In this document: in pieces, positions 11,540 through 18,300 of the stretch
Layout of the letters: each line of letters begins with the position of its first letter
How positions within the stretch are numbered: the first letter of the stretch is position 1
NCBI GenBank assembly: GCA_013115145.1
Contig: JAAPAO010000299.1
Location: 1 to 41,524, forward strand
Direction of reading: 5' to 3'
Source: Perkinsus chesapeaki ATCC PRA-425
Taxonomy: Eukaryota > Protista > Perkinsozoa
Length of the DNA: 41,524 nt
Translations under genes and position numbers: made by a program
Notes under the pieces: model-generated
Told to the model about the DNA's origin: nothing
The model's input: only the letters and a program-made list of their open reading frames with translations
Databases searched by the model: none

Positions 11540-12207
11540 TTCAACTGCATTAAAGTGAAGCCTCAATGTTAAAAGTGTTGCGTACAAGTTGATGCTAGTT
11601 AGGACTCCCCCCAAAGCAATTGAATATGCATTAACCAGCTAGTACTGACGTTCTACTTACACAATTAAGGCGGCCCCGCTGGAACATGTAGAACCGCGAT
11701 GCTTTCCAACGGTACGTATTGGCTACGGTGTAACTTACAAGAGCGGCCTTAAATAATCTTTAAGATGTCCTAAACAATAATATATTCGGATAATGGACCA
11801 TTATTAAAGGTTTACATAGAGTTCGCTATTCACAGCCTCATAGTTTAGAGACGAATTGCTTGTACCATTTCAATCTTGAAACGAATAGAATGATGGGAGT
11901 GTGCAAGAGCCTGATAACATAGGTCAATGCTTACACTGTCTATTAATATGAGGAGTGCGAGGTACTCATACGTACTAACCTATTCAAAGAAACCTCTACT
12001 GATAGACGGCAGCTGGGGTATTAAACTAAGGTAACTCAAAGTCAACAGCATGAATAATAGTATAGCATACACTGATCAGTCATCATCCGGCAATACATCA
12101 ATAATAAGACCGACCCGAGCATATTCCACACTCCAGTACGAGATACACAATAATATCGTACTAATAAAGTAGCAGCATAGCTGGGCATGCCAAGAGATAG
12201 TCACTTC

Positions 12208-12642
12208 TTAACCGGACTTGAACAAAAGGATGGCGACCTGTCCAAGATAGAAGTAGATGAAGTGCTTGCTCTCATGCGTGACATAGGAGCCGAAATTACG
12301 GCCAACAACGCAGTGCCAGGTAGGATTGTATCTGAAGGGGGAAGTGATTGAGGCACGACCGTAAGCAATAAAGCTATTACTTCTTGTCGAATTCCTTCTT
12401 AATATAGGCAGCGATATCCTTCTCGATGTTGTACCTGAAACGATACAAATACAACCAAACCAAGGAATCGCGAGAGTAGTGCAGGCGCTGTGGGACAGCC
12501 AGATAGACAAGCCAGCCAACCGCAGAGAGAAAATGGCTTCCTTGACGTACTTCTCAAGGGCTTGAGTAGCGCAATCGATAGCATCCTGCTGCATGTCCTC
12601 CGACATGTCGGCGTTCTTAATAACCGCCTTCCGCTCTGCCAT
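12208..12642 (-). CDS. DYNLL: Dynein light chain LC8, 89 aa, 3 exons (12551-12642, 12381-12434, 12208-12331)
   Basis: Spliced product [89 protein letters not shown]; GT-AG introns of 116 and 49 nt. Confidence 0.98.
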
Positions 12643-13477
12643 GATTACTGAAGGGTGTTTAGAAAGGAGTCTGACCCACACAATAATAGCTTCTGATCGA
12701 TCATCATCACCTCGAATACCCTTGACCACAAAACCACGTTAAACATCTTCACTATACGCTAATACGAGCTGAGGTAAAGTAGTGGAAGCCTCAACTGTCT
12801 CATACATTCTAACTTCATGCACATCCCGCTCACCCTCAATGATCGCAGCCTACAGTTTCATCGAAGGGCGAGCGAGCAACTGCACGAAGGCCCAGAAATT
12901 TCGTGCAGTTTTCTTGCAATTTGTCGAGCACAGTTTGTAAAAATGTGGTGTCAACTGACTCATGTTACTCTTGTTGACTTGTGAATGTCTCAATTGTACT
13001 GCACAGACCCCTGAATGCCTCAACAGGGCGCTCTGAGCGCGAACGTGCGGTAGATCCCGCAAATCCTTGCCAGCGTAATTGACCGTTGGATGATAGTATA
13101 AAATCACTGTGACATCTCTGCTGTCTTCTAGTAAGTACGCTGAACAGTAGAAATCCTGAAAGGCAAACAATCATCTGGTGTCCCCATCGGAAGATGCGGG
13201 GACAATTTTTGTGTCGGAGCATTTGTGCCAGAGAAGGCTAGGCCTTGTTTTATTTGGCGCTAACAGCATCTGTGACTTTACTTCTAAACGTGTTCTTCTT
13301 TCTTTGCTTCGGCATTCTGTCTGATGCTCCTCTAGCTGACTTCAAGGCTTGCGTTCCCTGTCGTGAAGTACCCTGTTATTAGTTGTAGTCGAGTGCTTCA
13401 ATTCGTGCATCTTAACGTATCGTAGAAGCTAAAGTATTGTTGTCTTTTAGTTCAAATTTCGTATTAATATAGATAAC

Positions 13478-14437
13478 ATGATATCCTACGCATTCGTTGC
13501 TGTTCCCCCATTCCCAATCATAACACCAGAAGTGGCCCAGTCTGTCAGTGAGGGTTTCGAAAAGGCCAGTGCCAAGGTCCAAGAACGTGTCGACGACTTC
13601 AAGAAGACCCCTACTGGTCAGAAGATCTCTGCCGCTGCTACCAGCGCAAGTGACTATATGTCAGCGGCTTTCGATAGCTTCTTGGACAGAACTGAGGCCT
13701 TGGTTGATAGCATGCTCCCCCCTCTTGAGGAACCTGCTGACGTTGCTCATTCTGAGGATGAGTCTGCTGCCACTACTACGACTCCTTCCTGCTCCACAAA
13801 GGATCAGGCTGCCGATGAGAAGCCCGCTACCGATGCTCAGCAGCATCAAAGTGAGCTTGCTCGTGCGCTCGGTCTCGCTGGTACCGTTTGCTCTCGAGTG
13901 TACATTCGTGCCGATAAGTACGTCATTGAGCCTTGTAAGGAGTACACGTCCGGACTGTGGGAGTTCTGGCGCTTCCTGTGGACCGGTGCTAAGGAGTCCT
14001 GCTGTGATGCTTGGGCTACATTCAAGGCCTGGGTTAGTAGGAAGTACTCCGAGATGAAAGAGAAGGCTCCTGCTGTATGGCACTCTATCAAGGTTGGTGC
14101 TGTCGGATGCTGGGAGTGGTTGAAGAGCGTTGCCTGCTTCACATTCGCCAAGGCTAAGGAATATTCTTTGTTGCTTAAGACTAAGGCCATCGAGGTCTAC
14201 AACATGGTTCTCACTCCTGAAAGGAAGCATGCTATACAGGAGGTTTATAAGATGGTCTCTGTAAAAGCATATGAGCTATTCAATCTTGCCAAGGATGCTG
14301 TCGTCAAGGCCGCTAAATTCGTCTATGCCAAGTTGACTTCAATCTTCACTTGGGAGAACTTCGAGAACGGTTGGACCGCCATCGGCTCTGCTTTCGCTTG
14401 CCCGTGGGCTTGCGGAGCATCTGCCACTAAGGCGTAA
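13478..14437 (+). CDS. Intronless 319-aa amphipathic helical protein, perilipin/PAT-like candidate
   Basis: Open 960-nt ORF. LDRTEALVDSMLPP resembles the perilipin L-x-x-S-E-x-L-V-D-x-x-L-P signature; tandem 11-residue repeats at 13988-14185. The CDS is solid; the family call is inference. Confidence 0.6.
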   Translation: MISYAFVAVPPFPIITPEVAQSVSEGFEKASAKVQERVDDFKKTPTGQKISAAATSASDYMSAAFDSFLDRTEALVDSMLPPLEEPADVAHSEDESAATTTTPSCSTKDQAADEKPATDAQQHQSELARALGLAGTVCSRVYIRADKYVIEPCKEYTSGLWEFWRFLWTGAKESCCDAWATFKAWVSRKYSEMKEKAPAVWHSIKVGAVGCWEWLKSVACFTFAKAKEYSLLLKTKAIEVYNMVLTPERKHAIQEVYKMVSVKAYELFNLAKDAVVKAAKFVYAKLTSIFTWENFENGWTAIGSAFACPWACGASATKA

Positions 14438-14539
14438 ACCTACAAGTCAGATTTGTTGATGCTTAAAGGGAGACGGTCACCACAGGCATCCTCACAAGTT
14501 ATTCGTTATATCTATTCTAGCTGCTGCTGCTGTTGTCTT

Positions 14540-15140
14540 ATGATACTTCCTCTCCCTCTTGGTCCAGTCATCTTCATCCATGATGAGGTTTGGGCTAATT
14601 CCGTAAATGTTTCAGTGATAGAGCTTGAAGGTAGTTGTAGACAGCAGGATATACACAATATGGCAATACGGCATCAATTTTCTCTTCTCTAGTTTCGTTG
14701 CCAATAGGATGCTATCTGGTTGAGTTCATTCAGTCTACACGGGGATCAACATTTGGGGCATTCCTGAGGTAATCGCGGCAACGTGCAACGCCCTCCATGG
14801 AGGATAAGGAATAAAGAGCGAACAATAGTCCTTTGTAAATTTCGTGTAGGCATTGGTGGGGTAAGGCACCAGGTCGGTATCGATACAGTTTAAAATGGTG
14901 GATCATGTAAATGGAGAACACTTCTCTCTCTTCTCCCAGCCGCATCCATTGGTACCTTTAGCAACCTTTGTGGTTGATAAGGATAACTTGGACGATATGG
15001 ATGAGCAAAAGGCTTCTGAAGAGTATGCTAGGAAGATACCAAGGTAGTAGATGGACGGGTGGGATGATGATGATGATGACAGTAACGCCGTATGCGTATT
15101 ATTACCTACTACTATTGACATTGTATTCAGACTCCACTAG
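14540..15140 (+). CDS. Hypothetical small multi-exon protein
   Basis: Exons join in frame via GT-AG introns: MILPLPLGPVIFIHDEVWANSVNVSVIELE-GCYLVEFIQSTRGSTFGAFLR-SVSIQFKMVDHVNGEHFSLFSQPHPLVPLATF...RLH*. No recognised domain. Confidence 0.45.
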
Positions 15141-15377
15141 GCTATTGCCAAGTGCGTGATGCTCAGGTCTGGGAAGCCCAGAAATTAGTTTGGATTCATC
15201 GGCGTTTTTTGCGGTTTTCCTCCGAGCTAGTGTGATTGTTATGATGCGGACTTCTACTACTAAAAATATCACGTCGTTGGTCCTCCTCCTTTCAGCTCTA
15301 ATATCCCCAGCGATGAAGCCCTTTTTGGACTGCCGGATTTTGCTGGTCAACTGAGAGATGTGACAAATCTAGTGGCA

Positions 15378-18300
15378 ATGGCGACCGCTACAGAAGGCTG
15401 TGATACGCCTTTGGCGGTGCATAGGATCGGGTAGTGCTAGGAGTATGGGCGTAGTTGGACGCTATAGCGCCTGCTGAATAGGTCTTGTTTGGTTCTGGAC
15501 TCCTCCAACGCTCCCATAGGGTCTTCGGATAGGGACGGCTTCGTCACATTGTGTCCGGCCGAGCAGTGCTCTCCTAAGGCCACACCCGCCTTAGCAACAA
15601 CACTGCCGGATACCACTCCAGAGGAGCTCGGACTGAAGGCTACAGTAAAACGAACGTTCCTGCACTTTACGGATGCCGAGGAAGAAGAGGAGCAAAAGGA
15701 GGCTGTAGTGGGGAGAACTAGGAGCGCTCCCCCGCGTCAAGGGGAAAAGGCAGTCAGCGATACGGACGAGGAGAGCAGCAATCAGAAGCTCTTGTCGGTG
15801 AAGCCAGTGAAGGAGCGTAATCCTCAAATTCGTGACCTCCTGGCTTTGGAGGACGGCCCTGTTCGTGACCCTCGAACTATGTTCCGGTTGGCCGTCCCTC
15901 GCCTCTGCGCCCCGCCATCTCGGTTCGGTCGTACGGTCCAATGGACTCTAGGCGGGTACAGGATACTACTGGGCTGTGACATGGTCGTGTTCCCTACAGA
16001 CAGTCGTACCTCAAATCCACTGGATTCTTTGGATTCCCTCTCATCCATGGCCTCTTTGAAGTTGGTCCCTCCTGGCACCAACTCCAGGGTGTCCAAGAAC
16101 CTGAGAAGGGATGCCTGGGTCGAGAATAGTCTGCTAAGTATTGGTAAAGTGGCTTGGTGCCACGGTAAAAGGGTTAGCCTTTGCAACACCTCTGATCTAG
16201 CCGATCAGCAGCAGGAGGAAGAGGATGGTACCTTCGACCCTGCGCAAGTGATAGACCAGGCGGAGCGACTTTTGCACTTCCTAAGACGCCACTGTACAAG
16301 GCAAGGGGGAACATACTACCTTTATCGGGACACTAACGCATGCGTGCTGTATGATACCACCAGCAAGCCTTTTGGAGACCAGTTGTCGAATGAGGGTGTT
16401 TCGCCAAGCTCATCGATGTTGAGCCGGCCTCTTGCAGAGCTCTGTGTGACTCTGGCTTCTAGGATGCCATCGGCTCCTGTTGAGACCAGACTGGATGTCC
16501 TCTGGAAAGGCCTAACTCTCATCCACCCTCAAAGGGTAGTATTCCGGCATTGATCGCCTTTGTCCCACCTAGTGTCTCCTCAGACCCGATATCCGGAGCT
16601 CTACTCGGTTATTTGTATGCAGCTCTCTTCCGTGGCTGATGAGATGGATTCTCGTATAGGACTGGTGCGATGTTGTCATCTACTAATGCAAGCTTTGGCG
16701 GCGTTTGATGAGAAGTAAGCTAGCTTCTCGTTATAACCCACTGATAGGGTTTGCTGTCAGGCCAAGTAACGGTAGTAATTACCGTCCAGATGCCTCAAGA
16801 GGCGGTGCTCCTCATCTCGGTGTCCAACTGTATGTATCATTCGCCTTCACTACTGTCCGTGCTGTTGAGAAGGTGATGGTCCCTCTTTACCAGAGCTGGT
16901 AGGCTTTCCTTTGGGAACTCATTCCTGTAGTGGTCCTCCTAAAGGTGCCGAGTGACCGCGGCTGAAGAGAAGGCCAATCGGAGCGAAGAGAGGCTGCGGC
17001 ATTCGATAGCTTGGCAGTTGTGGCTGCTACAGTGGCTCGCGTTGGCTGAGGTACATGACCTTTGCTGTTTACTTTATTATTGGTTTTGGCTAGGTGTCCT
17101 TGATGAAGGTGGACGCTGATAGACGAGCTGTTGAGTGCTGGAACGTTGAGAGGGATCTATGCAGGGTTATGGCACACAGACTGCATACTATAGCCAATTG
17201 CGGTATATCTCCACAGCAGATTTCGCAAGTAAGTCACACGCCACAAAATGTAGTGTAGAGTGTCGGTCACTAGGTGTCCAGCAACGTCGCTCTCGAGATC
17301 GTTCACGACGACCTTGAAGTCCTGGGTGAGGCGGCGGTCATACCCAACATCACAACGGAGACCTATTCGGAGTTGATATCGGCCACAGAAGGCCTTACGG
17401 ATGGCACGTTGAAATCCACCGGCTTACGGGGAGATTGGCTAAAGTAATCACCTCCGGGTTGTGCCATGGGAGACGGAGGGATGGTTTGTTAGGCACGTTG
17501 TGGTGAGCGACAAGCGACGCAAAGAGCTGGGCGAGGATGGCACTGTGGTGGGGTTCCTGAAGCTCACTGTGAAGTATCTGACTAGGGCACTGAAGACGGC
17601 AAATGCACCGCAAAGAGAACACAAACGACGACAGAAGTGGGCTCGTTGGTGTTGTTGGATAGTTGATAACTTTGGTGTGGCTCAAGATACACAGATGACT
17701 TTAGAAGGAGTGGCCGTGCTCAGCTGGCCAGCACTATCAATGAGCTTGGGACCATCCACCTTGGCAGGATGGTGGAGCTAATGCGAGCTGGGCCCTACCC
17801 TGATGATGACGGTGGGGCTGTGGCCTCTGCTGTGGATGCCTTCTGCGAATCATACAGTGAATTTGTTGCTGCCGGAGATAAACTCAACGTTATGGTGCCT
17901 CTGGTCAACTTGGCGAGGTAAGGATCGGACTCTCCATCGAGGCGGAAGCAGTGCTCCCTGTAGGCTTTGGTTGGCCCTTGCTAATTGTTCCGCATCGACG
18001 CCAGAGTCTGTTGAGAACTACCAGTGCATGTATAGGGCCATACGCCATTTGGATAGAGCAGCGAAGTGAGGGACACACAACTGCTGTCATTTCCCGTATT
18101 GTGATGGTTCCCTTCAGATCCACCTCAGCCAACAGGGATGCCGACTCTGCGTTTACTAAGCGTGACATTTACGCCACTGCTGCCGACCAAGCCCAGAGAC
18201 TCGGCAGGAGCCTTGCAACTGCCTTTATGGATGCAGACAATCTAACGCAGGAGGGTAAGGCCGCTGGACATCCCTAATATCCGGCTCTGTCCCCGATAGG

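What the first reader, a model, noticed from the sequence alone, without database searches (positions are those of the whole stretch)
13478..14437. Candidate perilipin-like lipid-droplet protein with a clean 11-mer amphipathic repeat array in an alveolate
Residues 171-236 parse into consecutive 11-mers: AKESCCDAWAT / FKAWVSRKYSE / MKEKAPAVWHS / IKVGAVGCWEW / LKSVACFTFAK / AKEYSLLLKTK, with an upstream CKEYTSGLWEF. Position 1 is hydrophobic, Lys is invariant at position 2, and position 9 is aromatic in five of the six. An 11/3 helix periodicity is the established lipid-binding architecture of perilipins, exchangeable apolipoproteins and synucleins. The upstream LDRTEALVDSMLPP (13682-13723) resembles the perilipin 'SEELVDxYLP' element. 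Perilipins are described mainly in animals, fungi and amoebozoans. The gene is intronless in an intron-dense region, and the repeats are unusually Trp/Cys-rich (possible palmitoylation). It may be a divergent PAT homologue or a convergent lipid-droplet coat.
Basis: partly seen in the sequence, partly recalled or inferred. Interest (0 to 1): 0.75.

Follow-up and report, generated by a model that had tools for sequence, protein, structure and literature searches.

The report
Perilipin-like amphipathic repeat protein of Perkinsus
This is a real, expressed, intronless gene of the oyster and clam parasite Perkinsus chesapeaki; its all-helical protein has 11-residue amphipathic repeats and a weak but consistent resemblance to perilipins, so it is a testable candidate lipid-droplet coat protein in a group where none is known.

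Summary
ORF 13478-14437 (+, 319 aa) exists, and the six 11-mers parse as written. Lag 11 is the strongest self-similarity (z 5.2). The Lys at position 2 and the aromatic at position 9 are conserved in Perkinsus marinus orthologues at about 62% identity.

RNA contigs show a stand-alone, unspliced mRNA with a spliced leader at 13449/50 and a poly(A) tail at about 14707. The deposited 1379-aa GenBank model is therefore a chimera.

The perilipin reading is partly supported.
- Seven of 11 full-length family members hit Pfam Perilipin at E 2e-5 to 1e-3 and three more at E 0.005 to 0.07, all below the curated cut-off (12.7-24.3 bits against 33).
- The match lies in the N-terminal part (residues 18-100 against profile 118-201, the perilipin 11-mer region plus the LVDxxLP motif). 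It does not lie in the Trp-rich repeats.
- There is no PAT domain.
- A language-model search of residues 15-150 ranks Perilipin, REF and Cap20 clusters first, with weak scores.
- The fold models are low-confidence and uninformative.

The Trp-rich repeats match the 11-residue repeat of phage tape-measure proteins best, probably by convergence.

The family has two paralogous subfamilies and was found only in Perkinsus. Lipid-droplet binding is inferred, not shown.

The parts
13449..13450 (+). AG acceptor of spliced-leader trans-splicing; the mature 5' UTR is 13451-13477 and contains no ATG
   Evidence: an RNA contig carries the loose end CCGTAGCCATTTTGGCTCA directly before 13449; the sequence reads ttttag|ttcaaattt.
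13478..14437 (+). Complete coding sequence, 319 aa plus stop, without introns
   Evidence: contigs tile it with no splice-type joint; a 319-aa transcript-derived protein, P0158, differs at one residue.
13478..13528 (+). N-terminal hydrophobic, Pro-rich segment (residues 1-17), specific to subfamily A and highly conserved
   Evidence: 13 of these 17 residues are invariant; absent from subfamily B.
13529..13777 (+). Residues 18-100: the stretch matched by Pfam Perilipin profile positions 118-201; predicted helices 17-43 and 45-79
   Evidence: Pfam. (helices); lag-11 z 4.0; 22-residue windows with muH 0.44-0.48.
13682..13723 (+). LDRTEALVDSMLPP motif (residues 69-82); L69, E73, L75, V76, L80 and P81 are invariant in both subfamilies
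13724..13843 (+). Acidic, Ser/Thr-rich linker (residues 83-122), predicted non-helical, variable in length between members
   Evidence: no helix at residues 80-118, pLDDT 24-35; gaps and low conservation.
13862..13912 (+). Conserved RALxLxxTVCSRVxxR block (residues 129-145) shared by both subfamilies
   Evidence: R129, A130, L133, V137, S139, R140 and R144 are invariant.
13922..14218 (+).
   Evidence: matched by phage tape-measure repeats.
14219..14392 (+). Further predicted helices (residues 248-305); in the model they pack with the repeat helices into a bundle
   Evidence: low confidence.
14399..14413 (+). C-terminal CPWAC motif (residues 308-312), conserved in subfamily A only
   Evidence: C308, P309, W310 and C312 are invariant; absent in subfamily B.
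14438..14707 (+). 3' UTR; poly(A) is added at about 14707
   Evidence: loose end of 15 A behind 14707; the genome is not A-rich there; no RNA contig lies at 14856-17500.

Best explanation
The gene encodes a member of a Perkinsus-restricted family of all-helical proteins. The parts, in order, are:
1. A perilipin-like N-terminal amphipathic region ending in an invariant E-x-L-V-D-x-x-L-P motif.
2. A disordered acidic Ser/Thr-rich linker.
3. A C-terminal array of 11-residue (11/3) amphipathic helices.

In this subfamily the 11-mer unit is h-K-(E)-x-A-x-x-x-W-x-x. On an 11/3 wheel, positions 4, 8, 1, 5 and 9 form a narrow apolar stripe. The invariant aromatic sits at one edge of the stripe, with the invariant Lys next to it at the polar/apolar boundary.

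The most likely mechanism is reversible binding to a lipid surface. In solution the helices are disordered or folded back into a bundle. On a phospholipid monolayer with packing defects, as on a lipid droplet, they lie flat with Trp and Lys at the interface. The protein would thus work like perilipins and exchangeable apolipoproteins.

Shown here: the gene structure, its expression as a mature mRNA, the repeat and its conservation, the 11/3 hydrophobic periodicity, and the sub-threshold Perilipin similarity.

Inferred: common descent with perilipins (about 45% likely) and lipid-droplet binding.
For: Real gene:
- A spliced leader and a poly(A) tail sit on contigs that cover only 13449-14707.
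- P. marinus and P. olseni have orthologues of 310-323 aa.

Perilipin likeness:
- PF03036 is the top Pfam hit for all five subfamily A proteins (E 2e-5 to 1e-3; residues 18-100, or 1-82 in P. olseni, against profile 118-201).
- It is the first or second hit for five subfamily B proteins that are only 26-28% identical to the query (E 3.4e-5 to 0.07, starting at profile 117-122 and running collinearly to profile 239-355).
- Profile positions 118-201 correspond roughly to the 11-mer repeat region of perilipins (residues 114-204 in PLIN3, PMC10238389), assuming that profile numbering tracks PLIN3 numbering, which I did not check.
- Eight phage-type or other 11-mer-rich control proteins hit Apolipoprotein, ApoLp-III, Phasin and YtxH, but none hit Perilipin at E <= 0.001.
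- A feature search of residues 15-150 ranks two Perilipin clusters, REF (a plant rubber-particle and lipid-droplet protein) and Cap20 (Pfam Perilipin_2) first, with scores 0.75-0.81.

11/3 amphipathic helices:
- Lag-11 z 5.2.
- Hydrophobic spectrum peak at 98.5 degrees, z 3.7-5.4 in the query and three orthologues.
- The paralogous subfamily carries a different, stronger 11-mer array (lag-11 z 9-12; peak 98.5 degrees, z about 6). The 11/3 array is therefore the conserved feature, not its sequence.

Architecture: predicted all-helical, with a disordered linker.

Against: - All Perilipin scores are below Pfam's cut-off of 33 bits.
- The same proteins hit phage tape-measure profiles equally well or better (P0002: phrog_167, E 3e-7, 29.5 bits). 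Hits of this size can therefore arise from shared periodic composition alone.
- A family profile found nothing convincing in the Protein Data Bank and did not find the TIP47 C-terminal domain. One profile gave no hit at all and the other gave three unrelated hits at E 0.39-1.3.
- The models are low-confidence (pLDDT 36.8 and 47.5). Foldseek gave no hit at E <= 0.001. The TIP47 match (1szi, Z 7.9, rank 45) lies within the range expected for any helical bundle.
- The Atlas structural match to a Perilipin cluster has TM 0.31.
- The feature scores are under 0.9, a level that shuffled proteins often reach.
- The amphipathic moment is modest (0.26-0.29).
- No localisation or proteomic data were found for Perkinsus.
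Confidence: 0.5

Rival explanations
1. A soluble hendecad helical bundle or coiled-coil scaffold with no lipid role. The 11-residue period would build a straight, non-supercoiled bundle with Trp in or beside the core, as in the repeats of phage tape-measure proteins. The Perilipin hit would be a by-product of periodic composition.
For: - The repeat region hits hundreds of tape-measure proteins (495 at E <= 0.001, 41 at E <= 1e-10). Those scanned carry TMP_3 or PhageMin_Tail domains.
- PHROG tape-measure hits are as strong as the Perilipin hit.
- The model packs residues 151-314 into a bundle that matches designed helical bundles best (Z 12).
- The apolar positions 1, 4, 5 and 8 are the core positions of hendecad coiled coils (established knowledge).
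Against: - It does not account for the conserved N-terminal region with its LVDxxLP motif, which hits Perilipin and no other Pfam family at a comparable E-value.
- In the paralogue the array is replaced by Ala/Lys/Asp/Thr-rich 11-mers of the apolipoprotein kind, which have a weak core.
- The bundle model is low-confidence.
Confidence: 0.22
2. An amphipathic protein that binds another membrane or protects against stress, rather than coating lipid droplets. Examples are a LEA-like desiccation or osmotic-stress protein, or a coat of the vacuole or another organelle.
For: - The subfamily B repeats (AKETAAKYxxD type) resemble the 11-mers of group 3 LEA proteins and apolipoproteins; this is partly from memory.
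- Sub-threshold Apolipoprotein, YtxH and Phasin hits.
- 11/3 helices also bind bilayers, for example synuclein (established knowledge).
Against: - No LEA family appears among the Pfam hits, even at E <= 1 to 10.
- The top feature-based neighbours of the N-terminal part are lipid-droplet coat families.
- A Trp-rich, fairly hydrophobic array (mean hydrophobicity 0.55) is unlike the very hydrophilic LEA proteins.
Confidence: 0.2
3. A secreted or host-directed membrane-active factor of the parasite.
For: Trp- and Lys-rich amphipathic helices are membrane-active in many peptides (general knowledge). The N-terminal 17 residues are hydrophobic.
Against: - The N-terminus is short and Pro-rich, and by eye it does not look like a signal peptide; no predictor was run.
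- Subfamily B lacks this segment altogether.
- No toxin or pore-former family passed any threshold. The AhlC, NheA and AhlB matches are in the generic helical range.
Confidence: 0.05

Closest known systems
Perilipins (PLIN1-3, PLIN5; insect LSD-1 and LSD-2), Pfam PF03036
   Same: - An amphipathic 11-mer helical region ends in an E-L-V-x-x-x-L-P type motif followed by acidic residues. That perilipins have this motif is my recollection of their sequences, not a tool result.
- A helical C-terminal half follows.
- The Pfam match is collinear from profile position about 118 onward.
- Like PLIN3, the protein is predicted to be largely unstructured or helical, with no transmembrane segment.
   Different: - No PAT domain: nothing aligns to profile positions 1-116.
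- Scores are below the family cut-off.
- The protein is shorter (319 aa).
- The C-terminal half is itself a Trp-rich 11-mer array.
- It carries a Pro-rich hydrophobic N-terminal tag and a CPWAC tail.
- It occurs in an alveolate, whereas perilipins are described from opisthokonts (PMC8100218; bioRxiv 10.1101/2025.10.20.683490); that they are also known from amoebozoans is my own knowledge.
Fungal Cap20/MPL1-type perilipins (Pfam Perilipin_2, PF17316) and plant REF/SRPP/LDAP (PF05755)
   Same: These are small lipid-droplet or rubber-particle coat proteins without hairpins. They are among the nearest named clusters by language-model features for residues 15-150.
   Different: There is no HMM hit to either family at E <= 10. 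The feature scores of 0.75-0.78 are leads only.
11-residue repeats of phage tail tape-measure proteins (Pfam TMP repeat PF05017; Belcaid et al., PMC3271669, abstract only read)
   Same: - The unit is nearly the same: hydrophobic, Lys, (Glu), x, Ala, x, x, hydrophobic, Trp/Phe, x, x, with the same 11-residue period.
- E-values go down to 5e-21 because several units match in series.
   Different: - The tape-measure proteins are bacterial-virus proteins of 600-2100 aa, with TMP_3 or PhageMin_Tail domains.
- Here the gene is a 319-aa eukaryotic one whose mRNA is spliced-leader trans-spliced and polyadenylated.
- The N-terminal domain and linker have no counterpart in tape-measure proteins.
- Convergence on a hendecad with an aromatic stripe is the simplest reading.
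Exchangeable apolipoproteins and apolipophorin-III (PF01442, PF07464); bacterial phasins
   Same: They have 11- or 22-residue amphipathic helices that fold as a bundle in solution and open on lipid. The paralogous subfamily gives sub-threshold Apolipoprotein hits. ApoA-IV and phasin PhaP appear among the structural matches (Z 8.8 and 8.1).
   Different: - The window protein itself has no Apolipoprotein hit.
- Scores are far below the cut-off (22-26 bits against 90).
- The structural matches are not above the helical-bundle background.
- No signal peptide is evident by eye (no predictor run).

Membership tests
Perilipin (Pfam PF03036) | Whole-protein score at or above the curated gathering score (33 bits) | tested here: not met
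   The scores are 22.6 bits for the window protein, 18.6-24.3 for the orthologues and 12.7-23.5 for the paralogues. One paralogue variant (P0154) gives no hit.
Perilipin (Pfam PF03036) | N-terminal PAT domain (about residues 1-116 of PLIN3; PMC10238389) | tested here: not met
   No member aligns to profile positions below 117, and the proteins begin at the equivalent of position about 118.
Perilipin (Pfam PF03036) | Central region of 11-mer repeats forming amphipathic helices | tested here: met
   - Residues 18-100 align to profile 118-201.
- Lag-11 is the top self-similarity for residues 17-80 (z 4.0).
- Windows reach muH 0.44-0.48.
- Helices are predicted at 17-79.
- In subfamily B the periodicity of this N-terminal stretch is not significant.
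Perilipin (Pfam PF03036) | C-terminal alpha/beta domain plus 4-helix bundle (TIP47 structure 1SZI) | tested here: inconclusive
   - The model of residues 151-314 is a helical bundle, but pLDDT is 50-68.
- 1szi_A matches at Z 7.9, rmsd 4.8 over 128 residues, at rank 45, within the helical background.
- The family profile does not find 1SZI by sequence.
- Subfamily B aligns on to profile positions 330-355 at low score.
- No beta strands are predicted.
Perilipin (Pfam PF03036) | Localisation on the lipid-droplet monolayer | not testable with these tools
   No paper in the held library links these proteins, or any perilipin, to Perkinsus.
Phage tape-measure protein | Tandem 11-residue units with conserved Trp/Phe | tested here: met
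Phage tape-measure protein | Long protein (hundreds to thousands of residues) with a tape-measure N-terminal domain, encoded in a phage tail module | tested here: not met
   The protein has 319 aa and no TMP_3, PhageMin_Tail or Tape_meas_lam_C hit. The gene is eukaryotic, with a spliced leader and a poly(A) tail, and lies next to a dynein light chain gene.
Exchangeable apolipoprotein / ApoLp-III (PF01442, PF07464) | Score above the curated cut-off | tested here: not met
   The window protein has no hit at E <= 10. The paralogues score 22-26 bits against a cut-off of 90.
LEA group 3 (LEA_4) | Profile match to the LEA 11-mer family | tested here: not met
   No LEA family is listed for any member at E <= 1 to 10.

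The most novel reading that the evidence does not exclude
The two Perkinsus subfamilies are true, PAT-less homologues of perilipins and coat the parasite's lipid droplets. That would place a perilipin-type coat in the SAR supergroup. The family would then either be much older than the opisthokont/amoebozoan lineage and lost repeatedly elsewhere, or have been transferred. It would also show that the module of 11-mer region, LVDxxLP motif and helical bundle, rather than the PAT domain, is the ancestral core.
Probability: 0.35. Interest if true: 0.7.

Novelty: new variant of a known kind. Interest (0 to 1): 0.55.

Why it matters
Lipid droplets occur in all eukaryotes, yet their major coat proteins (perilipins, oleosins and the algal and stramenopile droplet proteins) look lineage-specific. 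This keeps open whether the organelle's proteome is ancient or was invented repeatedly (bioRxiv 10.1101/2025.10.20.683490; PMC8100218).

No lipid-droplet coat protein of Perkinsus turned up in the literature searches made here, and I know of no perilipin-type one described for any alveolate. Perkinsus trophozoites contain lipid droplets (my own knowledge, not checked here).

A candidate family with a perilipin-like N-terminal module and interchangeable 11/3 amphipathic arrays gives a concrete protein to tag, and Perkinsus marinus can be transfected. It also offers a natural experiment on which repeat chemistry, Trp/Lys-rich or Ala/Lys/Asp-rich, targets which surface.

Practical points:
- The deposited gene model is a fusion and should be split.
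- The near-identity of the repeat unit with the tape-measure repeat of phages is a striking case of likely convergence on a hendecad with an aromatic stripe.

Tried and rejected
1. Sequence and profile searches of the Protein Data Bank with the protein, with A1 and with A2 gave no hit or only noise. The best hits were CTP synthase and similar at E 0.39-1.3.

2. AlphaFold2 with 4 and then 10 aligned sequences gave pLDDT 36.8 and 47.5. Foldseek against the PDB gave no hit at E <= 0.001. The Atlas shape search gave TM <= 0.43, with a Perilipin cluster in second place at TM 0.31. VIA-align wide gave only generic helical bundles. None of these discriminates between the readings.

3. The whole-protein language-model search gave no usable hit.

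4. I tried to fetch real perilipins for a profile-profile comparison, using a word search with alignment A3 at E <= 10. It returned only the eight Perkinsus proteins. The hhalign test against a perilipin alignment could therefore not be run.

5. A metagenome scan for further family members matched 373 pattern stretches, none confirmed.

6. The exhaustive representative search listed only Perkinsus proteins as full-length relatives. Its top 150 were filled by tape-measure proteins, so 345 weaker hits were not seen.

7. Horizontal transfer of a tape-measure fragment from a phage was considered and rejected as the main reading. Only the short periodic unit is shared, the unit varies between paralogues, and the gene has ordinary eukaryotic mRNA processing.

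8. The annotated 1379-aa fusion model was rejected.

9. Palmitoylation of the repeat Cys was rejected as unsupported, because those Cys are not conserved.

Full report
**What is there.**
The window is a whole contig of Perkinsus chesapeaki. GenBank protein KAF4664023.1 (FOL47_005333) lies on a contig of exactly 41,524 nt, and its first 297 residues are identical to the ORF.

The ORF runs from 13478 to 14437 on the + strand and encodes 319 aa. Lys is at position 2 in 6 of 6 units, an aromatic is at position 9 in 5 of 6, and LDRTEALVDSMLPP lies at nt 13682-13723. One detail is wrong: CKEYTSGLWEF starts at residue 153, which is out of register. The in-register upstream units start at 149 and 160.

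**Is the gene real, and what is its structure?**
Contigs of four runs from one 2015 study tile 13449-14707 with no splice-type joint. The only joints there are two opposite-strand joins in one run's contigs, which I take for assembly artefacts. Nothing lies between 14856 and 17500.
- One contig carries the loose end CCGTAGCCATTTTGGCTCA just before the AG at 13449-13450. From my own knowledge, this is the spliced leader of the dinoflagellate/Perkinsus type.
- Another contig ends in 15 A after about 14707, where the genome is not A-rich.

The mRNA is therefore mature, trans-spliced, polyadenylated, unspliced and monocistronic. Its 5' UTR is 27 nt without an ATG, and its 3' UTR is about 270 nt.

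The deposited 1379-aa model leaves the ORF at nt 14368 and jumps over the stop codon into the next gene, which is weakly EDRF1_N-like. It is a chimera.

The neighbouring dynein light chain gene on the minus strand has two introns within about 600 nt and its own spliced leader.

**Is the repeat more than chance?**
- BLOSUM62 self-similarity of residues 149-247 is highest at lag 11 among lags 1-40 (z 5.2; lag 22 z 3.4; lag 33 z 2.4). None of 500 shuffles reached this at any lag. The N-terminal residues 17-80 also peak at lag 11 (z 4.0).
- The invariant residues in the alignment with P. marinus orthologues (61-65% identity) are K172, W179, K183, Y190, K194, W201, W212, K216, F223 and K227. These are exactly positions 2 and 9 of successive units.
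- The hydrophobicity spectrum of 149-247 peaks at 98.5 degrees, against 98.2 for an 11/3 helix. There z is 3.7, with p 0.002 at that angle and 0.03 over all angles. Three orthologues give z 4.8-5.4.
- The P. olseni sequence gives no signal (z -0.4). Its alignment carries small insertions in this region, which may break the register.
- On an 11/3 wheel, positions 4, 8, 1, 5 and 9 form the apolar stripe, with the aromatic at its edge and Lys next to it.
- The moment is modest (0.26-0.29 on the Fauchere-Pliska scale). The array is real and amphipathic, but not 'clean'.

**Relatives.**
The word search found only Perkinsus proteins. They include two 'Oxyrrhis marina' transcriptome entries (93% identity, and identical but for one residue), two P. 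marinus proteins (about 62%) and P. olseni proteins.

The exhaustive profile search added a second subfamily (P0086 of P. marinus). Its orthologues in P. chesapeaki (FOL47_010976) and P. olseni came from a follow-up search.

The two subfamilies are 26-28% identical. They share the N-terminal region (FKKT-x-x-G, E-x-L-V-D-x-x-L-P), the RALxLxxTVCSR block and a few C-terminal positions (W212, F223, K227, E228). Subfamily B lacks the hydrophobic N-terminal 17 residues and the CPWAC tail. Its C-terminus is a different and much stronger 11-mer array of the AKETAAKYxxD kind (lag-11 z 9-12; hydrophobic peak 98.5 degrees, z about 6).

No member outside Perkinsus was found by a profile word search or by a metagenome scan. 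The limits of these searches are given below.

**Perilipin or not?**
Evidence for:
- Pfam Perilipin is the top hit of all five subfamily A proteins (E 2e-5 to 1e-3). The match always runs from residue 18 to about 100 (1-82 in the shorter P. olseni model) against profile 118-201.
- It is the first or second hit of five subfamily B proteins (E 3.4e-5 to 0.07). These matches start at profile 117-122 and run collinearly to 239-355.
- In PLIN3 the 11-mer repeats span residues 114-204, after a PAT domain of about 1-116 (PMC10238389). If profile numbering roughly tracks PLIN3 numbering, which I did not check, the match is to the perilipin repeat region and its end motif, and the PAT domain is simply absent.
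- Eight control proteins rich in 11-mers hit Apolipoprotein, ApoLp-III, Phasin and YtxH, but none hit Perilipin at E <= 0.001.
- A language-model search with residues 15-150 ranked two Perilipin clusters, REF and Cap20 (Perilipin_2) first, at scores 0.75-0.81, a level that counts only as a lead.

Evidence against:
- Every score is below Pfam's cut-off (33 bits).
- The same proteins hit PHROG tape-measure families at E down to 3e-7.
- Profile searches of the PDB do not find TIP47.
- Both AlphaFold models are poor (pLDDT 36.8 and 47.5).
- The structural matches are not above background: a Perilipin cluster at TM 0.31; 1szi at Z 7.9, rank 45; apoA-IV at Z 8.8; phasin at Z 8.1; designed bundles at Z 12.

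I could not fetch perilipin sequences for a profile-profile test. I put common descent with perilipins at about 45%. 'Works like a perilipin or exchangeable apolipoprotein' is somewhat more likely.

**The Trp-rich repeats and phage tape measures.**
The profile of subfamily A matched 495 proteins at E <= 0.001 and 41 at E <= 1e-10. Besides the Perkinsus proteins, most of the 150 listed are 600-2100 aa long with several matched stretches, all against query residues about 150-250.

Those scanned carry TMP_3 or PhageMin_Tail domains. Their units (for example IKENAGNIYSN and VKERIGGVWNN) share the consensus hydrophobic-Lys-(Glu)-x-Ala-x-x-hydrophobic-Trp-x-x with the Perkinsus units.

Three facts argue against transfer from a phage: only the short unit is shared, the paralogue uses another unit, and the gene is processed as an ordinary Perkinsus mRNA. 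Convergence on a hendecad helix with an aromatic stripe is the simplest reading.

This matters for the verdict in two ways.
- 11-mer helical proteins cross-hit at 20-30 bits without being related.

**Mechanism proposed.**
The N-terminal amphipathic region and the C-terminal 11/3 array lie flat on a phospholipid monolayer with packing defects. Trp and Lys sit at the interface. Off the surface, the C-terminal helices may fold back into a bundle, and the acidic Ser/Thr-rich linker stays disordered.

Three features are specific to subfamily A and conserved: the Pro-rich hydrophobic N-terminal tag, the invariant C138 and the CPWAC tail. Their roles are unknown. The Cys inside the repeats vary, so palmitoylation there is unsupported.

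The gene structure, expression, periodicity and conservation are shown. Lipid binding and droplet localisation are inferred.

**Literature.**
No paper in the held library connects perilipin with Perkinsus or names these loci. Reviews state that perilipins are confined to the lineages where they were found (bioRxiv 10.1101/2025.10.20.683490; PMC8100218).

Its size fits the 310-aa paralogue FOL47_010976, but I could not confirm that it is the same locus.

**Limits.**
- Only the top 150 of 495 hits of the exhaustive search were visible.
- The word search needs shared 5-residue words.
- The RNA runs are kept as assembled contigs, so they give no expression level.
- The runs' labels are coded, and their RNA nature is inferred from the spliced-leader and poly(A) ends.

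Noticed in passing
window 13478-14368 joined to about 15200 onward (GenBank model FOL47_005333): The deposited 1379-aa model is a chimera. It leaves this ORF after residue 297 at a predicted donor, skips the stop codon, and continues into the downstream gene, which is weakly EDRF1_N-like. RNA contigs run unspliced through that point and end in poly(A) at about 14707.
   Followed up: yes
window 12089-12672, minus strand: A dynein light chain LC8 gene (Pfam Dynein_light, E 2e-28). It has two GT..AG introns (12332-12380 and 12431-12546) and a spliced-leader loose end at 12672.
   Followed up: partly
P0158 and P0001 (UniRef A0A7S3UKP8 and A0A7S3ULT7, labelled Oxyrrhis marina): Transcriptome proteins filed under Oxyrrhis marina are identical but for one residue (P0158) or 93% identical (P0001) to this P. 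chesapeaki ORF. The RNA contigs match the window at 99-100%. This suggests Perkinsus chesapeaki transcripts inside that transcriptome (contamination or mislabelling).
   Followed up: partly
window 13820-14340: Two RNA sequence variants cover the ORF in the same runs, differing at 11-16 positions per 120-220 nt. They fit the 93% variant P0001 and may be alleles or a recent duplicate.
   Followed up: no
P0161 (FOL47_010976, another P. chesapeaki contig), P0086 and P0153 (P. marinus), P0162 (P. olseni): A paralogous subfamily with the same N-terminal module but a C-terminal array of AKETAAKYxxD-type 11-mers. It gives sub-threshold Apolipoprotein and Perilipin hits. It is probably the object of the earlier scan note s1-221190.
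   Followed up: partly
P0005-P0152 (hits): The 11-residue repeat of phage tape-measure proteins has nearly the same unit as the Perkinsus repeats. These phage proteins also give sub-threshold hits to ApoLp-III, Apolipoprotein, Phasin, YtxH and Baculo_PEP_C.
   Followed up: partly
window 15489-16553, plus strand: A 354-aa ORF with a weak EDRF1 N-terminal hit (E 2e-4, below the cut-off). It is part of the gene that was wrongly fused to this one. No RNA contig from the four runs covers it.
   Followed up: no
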